NCBI RefSeq assembly: GCF_006345805.1
Contig: NC_043005.1
Span: 19,158,001-19,222,000, forward strand
Origin: Octopus sinensis
Lineage: Eukaryota
Length of the DNA: 64,000 bases
Direction of reading: 5' to 3'
The position numbers were made by a program, and so were the translations under genes. Shown here piece after piece: positions 13,050 to 40,592 of the stretch (position 1 is its first letter; every line of letters starts with the position of its first letter). The notes below the pieces were generated by a model, which saw nothing but the letters and a program-made list of their open reading frames with translations, searched no databases and had not been told where the DNA came from.

Positions 13050-40592
<27,543 letters not shown>

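What the first reader, a model, noticed from the sequence alone, without database searches (positions are those of the whole stretch)
20965..20976. Otherwise intact neuropeptide GPCR broken by a single-base frameshift in ECL2
Seen in sequence: the minus strand reads TGT CAC GAA ATT TGG GCA GTT TAA (CHEIWAV*), while TM5-TM7 continue in the -1 frame (GGC AGT TTA AAA CAG CGG ATA CTA TAT = GSLKQRILY). One extra G in the G3 run (plus-strand ccc, 20973-20975) gives [19 protein letters not shown], a typical ECL2-TM5 junction, and makes the exon 680 bp so both splice phases fit. There is no other lesion in ~1.2 kb of CDS. Established knowledge: homopolymer indels are the commonest long-read assembly error, and a stop 437 nt upstream of the next exon junction would be an NMD target. 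Inference: most likely an assembly error that would hide or mis-annotate this receptor. Otherwise it is a very recent null allele or a 4-TM truncated isoform.
Basis: partly seen in the sequence, partly recalled or inferred. Interest (0 to 1): 0.75.

Follow-up and report, generated by a model that had tools for sequence, protein, structure and literature searches.

The report
One-base gap in octopus peptide receptor
A conserved octopus neuropeptide-receptor gene is one base short in its largest exon in this assembly, while three related species are intact there, so this is most likely a sequencing-consensus error and otherwise a very young null allele; either way it is an ordinary finding.

Summary
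On the minus strand, exon 3 (21206..20528) of a class-A peptide GPCR reads CHEIWAV-stop, and TM5-TM7 continue in the -1 frame. The exon is 679 nt; its splice phases need 680.

Octopus vulgaris and O. bimaculoides read TGG GCC AGT here, and Argonauta hians reads TGG GCG AGT (Trp-Ala-Ser). The window reads TGG GC- AGT. The G3 run is therefore the normal state. The missing base is the third position of an Ala codon, not a fourth G, so the proposed read test (G3 versus G4) would mislead.

All three relatives have an intact 680-nt exon and annotated 495-496-aa proteins. RefSeq calls the O. bimaculoides protein "QRFP-like peptide receptor".

Exons 2-4 in the window carry no other lesion. Exon 1 lies outside the window, so "otherwise intact" is shown for 407 of about 496 codons.

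Constraint persisted until very recently. Against O. bimaculoides, omega is about 0.10. The window lineage has 7 synonymous and 2 non-synonymous changes.

One-base differences from O. vulgaris are skewed towards missing bases in the window (15 versus 5).

Verdict: consensus error about 0.62, young real null allele about 0.35. No reads were available to decide. Low interest.

The parts
40497..40592 (-). Coding exon 2 (96 nt): end of TM2, ECL1 and start of TM3 (..[31 protein letters not shown]+G). Acceptor ttccAG, donor GTGAGT.
   Evidence: tblastn of Lottia, Mya and Octopus proteins. DNA read. 100% identical to O. vulgaris.
20528..21206 (-). Coding exon 3, TM3 to helix 8. It is 679 nt here and 680 nt in every relative examined. 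It carries the frameshift.
20972..20973 (-). The lesion: only GC remains of the Ala codon between Trp (20976-20974) and Ser (20971-69). One base is missing (GCC in O. vulgaris and O. bimaculoides, GCG in Argonauta). On the plus strand this is CTGCCC where the Octopus relatives have CTGGCCC.
   Evidence: Four-way DNA alignment. Window versus O. vulgaris. Polarised as a window-specific deletion with O. bimaculoides and Argonauta as outgroups.
20965..20967 (-). Premature TAA in the upstream frame, 437 nt before the exon 3/4 junction.
13050..13496 (-). Last coding exon (447 nt including the stop): C-terminal tail with the family motif [11 protein letters not shown]. Acceptor cctAG, phase 0.
   Evidence: Three substitutions relative to O. 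vulgaris.

Best explanation
The window holds exons 2-4 of the Octopus orthologue of a mollusc-wide class-A peptide receptor. RefSeq calls the O. bimaculoides protein 'QRFP-like peptide receptor'. Its nearest solved relatives are the NPFF, QRFP and galanin receptors.

The one-base gap in the ECL2 Ala codon is most likely an error of the assembly consensus: a dropped C in a CC doublet. The animal's real gene would then be intact and encode a 496-aa receptor with ...CHEIWASLKQR... The practical effect is that gene predictors will split the receptor, truncate it or label it a pseudogene in this assembly.

Shown: the position and nature of the gap, intactness in three relatives, and purifying selection on the window's own lineage.

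Inferred: that the gap arose in the assembly and not in the animal.
For: 1. The lesion is private to the window. O. vulgaris (about 1.5-1.8% diverged and collinear over the whole window), O. bimaculoides, Argonauta hians and a more distant cephalopod contig all have a 680-nt exon.

2. There is no sign of relaxed constraint.
- Window versus O. bimaculoides over exons 2-4: 28 synonymous and 10 non-synonymous changes, pS 0.103, pN 0.0106, omega about 0.10.
- Polarised with Argonauta, the window lineage has 7 synonymous and 2 non-synonymous changes, both in the C-tail and none in the 7TM core.
- Against O. vulgaris there are only 6 substitutions in 1,222 nt, compared with about 1.5-1.8% in the introns.
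- DRL, CWSP, NPILY and both disulfide cysteines are retained.

3. One-base indels between the window and O. vulgaris are asymmetric. In unique sequence with clean flanks, the window is shorter in 15 of 20 cases (binomial p = 0.04). Eight of those 15 are a lost C or G, six of them from a two-base run, like this lesion. If the excess of about 10 events is error, roughly 0.3 such errors are expected in the 1.2 kb of CDS. My own rough prior for a tolerated frameshift in a gene under this much constraint is about 0.01.

4. Established knowledge: long-read consensus errors are mostly one-base indels and create false frameshifts (for example PMC12007338).
Against: - No reads, transcripts or second assembly of the same animal could be reached, so the central inference is untested.
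- The site is a two-base run, not a long homopolymer, and short runs are not where long-read errors concentrate.
- The overall ratio of one-base indels to substitutions against O. vulgaris (20 to 354 in clean unique sequence) is in the normal biological range, so the assembly is not heavily error-laden.
- With an outgroup, only 5 window-derived and 2 vulgaris-derived indels could be polarised, which is not significant.
- The 15:5 skew is borderline. It could be chance, or it could reflect insertion errors in the ONT-based O. vulgaris reference (PMC10700109).
Confidence: 0.62

Rival explanations
1. The gap is a real, very young loss-of-function allele. A one-base deletion in the animal truncates the receptor after TM4. 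It is either heterozygous or polymorphic, with the assembler having picked that haplotype, or it was fixed only recently in this lineage.
For: - The sequence as given carries the gap.
- The deletion sits in a short run, where real slippage deletions also occur.
- The window's indel-to-substitution ratio against O. vulgaris is biologically ordinary, so most one-base differences there are probably real.
- Heterozygosity in this species group is high (1.22% in O. vulgaris, PMC10700109).
- The absence of any second lesion is what a young allele predicts.
Against: - The gene is conserved across molluscs with omega about 0.10, and there are no non-synonymous changes in the 7TM core on the window lineage.
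- By a Poisson bound, neutral evolution can cover at most about 18% of the branch since O. bimaculoides.
- The closest relative examined, O. vulgaris, is intact.
Confidence: 0.35
2. The frameshift is decoded or used. Options are programmed -1 ribosomal frameshifting, transcript-level correction (slippage or editing), or a deliberately produced 4-TM truncated isoform.
For: None beyond the bare fact of the frame change. A TTTAAAA string lies a few bases downstream.
Against: - The needed shift is -1, but no X XXY YYZ heptamer lies in the upstream frame. TTTAAAA is phased for the downstream frame (read).
- The frameshift is absent from all relatives, so it is not a conserved recoding site.
- A-to-I editing cannot restore a frame.
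- Polymerase slippage needs long A or T runs.
- No relative encodes a 4-TM form at this point.
Confidence: 0.02
3. It is an old unitary pseudogene, with the receptor lost in this Octopus lineage.
For: A premature stop lies in the largest exon.
Against: - There is a single lesion in 1,222 nt.
- Omega is about 0.10, with a window-lineage synonymous to non-synonymous count of 7:2.
- The splice sites of all three exons are canonical.
- The sister species is intact.
Confidence: 0.01

Closest known systems
Octopus vulgaris 'galanin receptor 2b-like' CAI9728779.1 (P0073, 496 aa) and O. bimaculoides 'QRFP-like peptide receptor' XP_014771366.1 (P0039, 496 aa)
   Same: These are orthologues with the same four-exon structure and the same splice phases. 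Over exons 2-4 the window differs from O. vulgaris by 6 substitutions in 1,222 nt (2 amino acids). It is 97% identical to O. bimaculoides in exon 3 DNA.
   Different: Their exon 3 is 680 nt with GCC (Ala) after the ECL2 Trp. The window has GC only, which gives a frameshift and a stop three codons after the Trp.
Argonauta hians 'trissin receptor-like' GAB1599445.1 (P0040, 495 aa)
   Same: An orthologue in a distant octopod. It is 93% identical to the exon 3 query protein, and Trp-Ala-Ser is conserved at the site (GCG).
   Different: It is intact and has much shorter introns (the locus is about 10 kb).
Vertebrate RFamide-type and related peptide receptors with solved structures: NPFFR2 (9m54), QRFPR/GPR103 (8wz2), GALR2 (7wq4)
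   Same: These are the best PDB sequence matches (E = 1.6e-32, 7.8e-31, 1.4e-28). The spacing C-x-E-x-W-x(4)-R-x(2)-Y across ECL2 and TM5 matches NPFFR2 without gaps.
   Different: Only about 30% identical, and the scores do not separate the three families. The automated names of the mollusc orthologues disagree (QRFP-like, galanin 2b-like, NPFF2-like, trissin-like, CCK-B-like). The ligand is unknown.
False frameshifts from long-read assembly consensus errors
   Same: A single one-base deletion in an otherwise conserved ORF. It is private to one assembly and sits in a short same-base run.
   Different: Not verified with reads here. The run is only two bases long.

Membership tests
Rhodopsin-like (class A) GPCR, Pfam 7tm_1 | Match to PF00001 above the gathering score | tested here: met
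   136.9 bits against a cut-off of 30.5, E = 1.1e-39, profile positions 35-260 of 260, with X at the shifted codon.
Rhodopsin-like (class A) GPCR, Pfam 7tm_1 | Hallmark motifs: D/E-R-Y-type at the end of TM3, the TM3-ECL2 cysteine pair, CWxP in TM6, NPxxY in TM7 | tested here: met
   SLDRLLA; Cys in MCKFAG and in YFCHEIW; CWSPY; NPILY.
Rhodopsin-like (class A) GPCR, Pfam 7tm_1 | Seven transmembrane segments encoded by one continuous reading frame | tested here: not met
   The frame breaks after TM4 at 20972/3. TM1 and most of TM2 (exon 1) are outside the window. The orthologues meet this feature.
QRFP / NPFF-type peptide receptor (orthology with the vertebrate receptors) | Clearly closer to QRFPR or NPFFR than to other peptide-receptor families | tested here: inconclusive
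   NPFFR2 116 bits, QRFPR 111, GALR2 103, OX1R 91. Source names of the orthologues conflict. No phylogeny was built.
QRFP / NPFF-type peptide receptor (orthology with the vertebrate receptors) | Activated by an RFamide-type peptide | not testable with these tools
   This needs a receptor-activation assay.
Unitary pseudogene | Relaxed constraint (omega near 1) and accumulation of further lesions | tested here: not met
   Omega about 0.10. The window lineage has 7 synonymous and 2 non-synonymous changes. One lesion in 1,222 nt. Splice sites are intact.
Unitary pseudogene | The lesion is present in the organism's DNA (reads, several individuals) | not testable with these tools
   No reads or same-species contigs were found.
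Programmed -1 ribosomal frameshift site | A slippery X XXY YYZ heptamer in the zero frame at the shift, conserved in relatives | tested here: not met
   No such heptamer lies in the upstream frame. Relatives have no frameshift.

The most novel reading that the evidence does not exclude
The gap is real. An Octopus of the vulgaris/sinensis group would then carry a naturally occurring, very young knockout allele of a mollusc-wide, still orphan QRFP/NPFF-like peptide receptor. The allele would be either segregating or just fixed, and would offer a natural null for a receptor whose ligand and role are unknown.
Probability: 0.33. Interest if true: 0.35.

Novelty: already known. Interest (0 to 1): 0.15.

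Why it matters
The value is mostly practical. In this assembly the receptor would be split, truncated or labelled a pseudogene by annotation pipelines, although sister species show a complete 496-aa gene. Anyone cataloguing cephalopod neuropeptide receptors from this assembly should correct for that.

The case also shows that a repair guessed from sequence context alone can be wrong. Adding a G to the nearest homopolymer picks the wrong base and residue and leads to a read test that cannot discriminate. Orthologue DNA fixed this.

If the gap proves real, it would be a natural null allele of an orphan, strongly conserved peptide receptor. That would be of moderate interest to cephalopod neurobiologists.

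Tried and rejected
- The single-sequence protein search returned no hit above 70% identity, which for a while suggested the gene was unannotated in Octopus. The profile search overturned this by finding the O. bimaculoides (99%) and Argonauta (93%) proteins.
- Exact-product look-ups of four window ORFs found nothing: the two halves of exon 3 and two forms of the tail ORF.
- A DNA pattern scan of JGI metagenome contigs, allowing 0-2 extra bases at the site, found nothing.
- The Lottia locus tag is not in the library either.
- The search for exon 1 in the window failed: motif scans, tblastn with Lottia and Octopus proteins, and reading all minus-strand ORFs above 40600. It is absent. By collinearity with O. 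vulgaris it should lie about 4 kb beyond coordinate 64000.
- A relative-rate test against the distant cephalopod gave inconsistent results depending on the outgroup. It was superseded by the close-species analysis.
- The count of private substitutions at conserved columns was slightly raised for the window, but most of these are shared with other cephalopods.
- tRNA and Rfam scans of the window found nothing.
- A literature search for reported indel errors in the O. sinensis assembly gave nothing specific.
- Recoding, editing and small-intron explanations were considered and rejected (see the rival explanations).

Full report
**Observation**

The sequence is ...TAC TTT TGT CAC GAA ATT TGG GCA GTT TAA. 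The Trp codon is at 20976-20974 and the stop at 20967-20965. The rest of the receptor ([21 protein letters not shown]... through CWSPY, NPILY and helix 8) is open in the -1 frame.

The exon runs from an AG acceptor (first base 21206) to a GTGAGT donor (last base 20528) and is 679 nt. It receives one base from the previous exon (G + GC = Gly) and hands over in phase 0 to the last exon. Its length must therefore be 2 mod 3, and 679 is one base short.

**Gene model**

tblastn with homologues, and later with the Octopus proteins, gives three exons in the window:
- 40592..40497 (96 nt; end of TM2, ECL1, start of TM3)
- 21206..20528 (TM3 to helix 8)
- 13496..13050 (C-tail with the family motif [11 protein letters not shown], plus the stop)

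The first coding exon is not in the window. In the orthologues it has 89 codons (MASVSD...NMAVADLA). By collinearity with O. vulgaris it should lie about 4 kb beyond coordinate 64000. 'Otherwise intact' is thus verified for 407 of about 496 codons.

**Where the base is missing**

In alignment A1, all 17 homologues have exactly one residue between the ECL2 Trp and the next conserved position. Human NPFFR2 has the same spacing. The shift is therefore confined to the two bases GC at 20973-20972.

The single-sequence search gave nothing closer than 70% identity. A profile search with A1 then found 'QRFP-like peptide receptor [Octopus bimaculoides]' (P0039, 99% over the exon) and 'trissin receptor-like [Argonauta hians]' (P0040, 93%). 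The cluster of P0039 also holds two O. vulgaris proteins. All of them read CHEIWASL[KR]QR.

I fetched the three genomic loci: L005 for O. bimaculoides, L006 for A. hians and L007 for O. vulgaris. Aligning the exon DNA gives:

| Source | Sequence at the site |
|---|---|
| O. vulgaris | TGG GCC AGT |
| O. bimaculoides | TGG GCC AGT |
| A. hians | TGG GCG AGT |
| Window | TGG GC- AGT |

The lost base is the third position of an Ala codon, a C of a CC doublet in the two Octopus species. Any base there restores Ala, not Gly. With O. bimaculoides and Argonauta as outgroups, the event is a deletion private to the window.

**What the window is**

The whole window is collinear with the O. vulgaris reference locus, with about 1.5-1.8% substitutions. 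In exons 2-4 there are only 6 substitutions in 1,222 nt. O. vulgaris and O. sinensis are reported to have split about 2.5 Mya, and the O. bimaculoides lineage about 34 Mya. O. vulgaris heterozygosity is 1.22% (PMC10700109). The window therefore comes from an octopus of the vulgaris/sinensis group. I cannot say which assembly it is.

**Constraint**

Against a distant cephalopod contig (L001, 73% amino-acid identity, same 680-nt exon), synonymous sites are saturated. pN is 0.15 upstream and 0.19 downstream of the shift.

The informative comparison is with the close species.
- Window versus O. bimaculoides over exons 2-4: 28 synonymous and 10 non-synonymous differences, pS 0.103, pN 0.0106, omega about 0.10.
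- Polarised with Argonauta, the window lineage has 7 synonymous and 2 non-synonymous changes, both in the C-tail and none in the 7TM core. The O. bimaculoides lineage has 14 and 8.
- With about 3.5 non-synonymous sites per synonymous site, neutrality would predict about 24 non-synonymous changes for 7 synonymous ones.
- A Poisson upper bound on the observed 2 allows neutral evolution for at most about 18% of that branch.

All hallmark motifs are present. An old pseudogene is excluded. The lesion is either very young or not biological.

**Error or allele?**

No reads, transcripts or same-species contigs could be reached. As a proxy I compared all one-base indels between the window and the O. 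vulgaris locus.

- In unique sequence with 12 clean bases on each side there are 20 such events against 354 substitutions. This is a biologically normal ratio, so the assembly is not heavily error-laden.
- In 15 of the 20 events the window is the shorter one (p = 0.04). Eight of those are a lost C or G, six of them from a two-base run, exactly like the lesion.
- The O. vulgaris reference is ONT-based with Illumina polishing (PMC10700109). Residual ONT deletion errors would make that assembly shorter, not the window.
- Outgroup polarisation succeeded for only seven events: 5 window-derived and 2 vulgaris-derived. This is not significant.

If the excess of about 10 events is consensus error, about 0.3 such errors are expected in the 1.2 kb of CDS. 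My own rough prior for a real frameshift surviving in a gene under omega about 0.1 is of the order of 0.01 (an estimate, not a measurement). If the excess is chance, the two explanations are of comparable weight. I put consensus error at about 0.62 and a real young allele at about 0.35.

**Other readings**

- A -1 programmed frameshift would need a slippery heptamer phased in the upstream frame. There is none, and the nearby TTTAAAA is phased for the downstream frame.
- The shift is not conserved in relatives.
- A-to-I editing cannot restore a frame.
- A small intron is excluded, because all homologues are colinear through the site.

**Family**

Pfam 7tm_1 scores 136.9 bits. The best solved relatives are NPFFR2, QRFPR and GALR2, within about 13 bits of one another.

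Orthologues occur across bivalves, gastropods, cephalopods and a nemertean, under conflicting automated names. It is a conserved, apparently orphan peptide receptor of the RFamide/galanin/orexin neighbourhood. Subfamily and ligand are unresolved.

**Verdict**

The sequence observation is right, and the general inference (artefact or very recent null) is right. The proposed repair and the proposed read test are wrong in detail. The receptor is already annotated intact in three relatives. This is an ordinary finding of low interest. The correct test is to count GGGCAG against GGGCCAG on the coding strand.

Noticed in passing
window 11650-11749: The 100-N gap stands for about 11.8 kb present in the O. 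vulgaris reference (L007 57545-69374). That missing stretch holds an alternative 3' coding exon of the 454-aa isoform P0072 (L007 66259-66312). That isoform's last exon lies beyond window coordinate 1.
   Followed up: partly
whole window versus L007: One-base indels in unique sequence are asymmetric. The window is shorter in 15 of 20 cases (p = 0.04). Eight of those are a lost C or G, six of them from two-base runs, for example at 15318, 26567, 30244, 30729 and 46522. This may be a deletion-biased consensus-error signature of this assembly.
   Followed up: partly
window beyond 64000 (outside the window): Coding exon 1 of the receptor (89 codons) is not in the window. Introns here are about twice as long as in the O. 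bimaculoides assembly: 19.3 versus 9.1 kb and 7.0 versus 3.0 kb. That assembly has several N gaps in the locus.
   Followed up: yes
window 20206-20508 and 21321-21380: Exon 3 is bracketed by long trinucleotide microsatellites: (ATA)38, (TTA)18 and (TAG)16 downstream, and (TCA)20 upstream. These may be why no short-read-derived contig or ORF for this exon from this species group appears in the protein collection.
   Followed up: no
window ~3451-4080 (+), 11030-11636 (+), 43550-44032 (-): Several copies of one interspersed repeat share an ORF motif ...FYLFQSFDCGHAG.PPLVEQ...RGRKHTSI.CQ.... It is probably an abundant octopus SINE or TE family. It was not characterised.
   Followed up: no
tool behaviour (versus 38): The single-sequence homologue search did not return the 99%-identical O. 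bimaculoides protein or the 93%-identical Argonauta protein. The profile search with the same exon did. A negative from the first kind of search should not be read as 'not annotated'.
   Followed up: yes
window 20697 (GAA, Glu) and 13155 (CAT, His): These are the only two amino-acid differences from the O. vulgaris protein in exons 2-4. Glu versus Gln in ECL3 (LDFELNQ versus LDFQLNQ) is derived in O. vulgaris. His versus Gln in the tail (ILHHSL versus ILQHSL) is derived in the window.
   Followed up: yes
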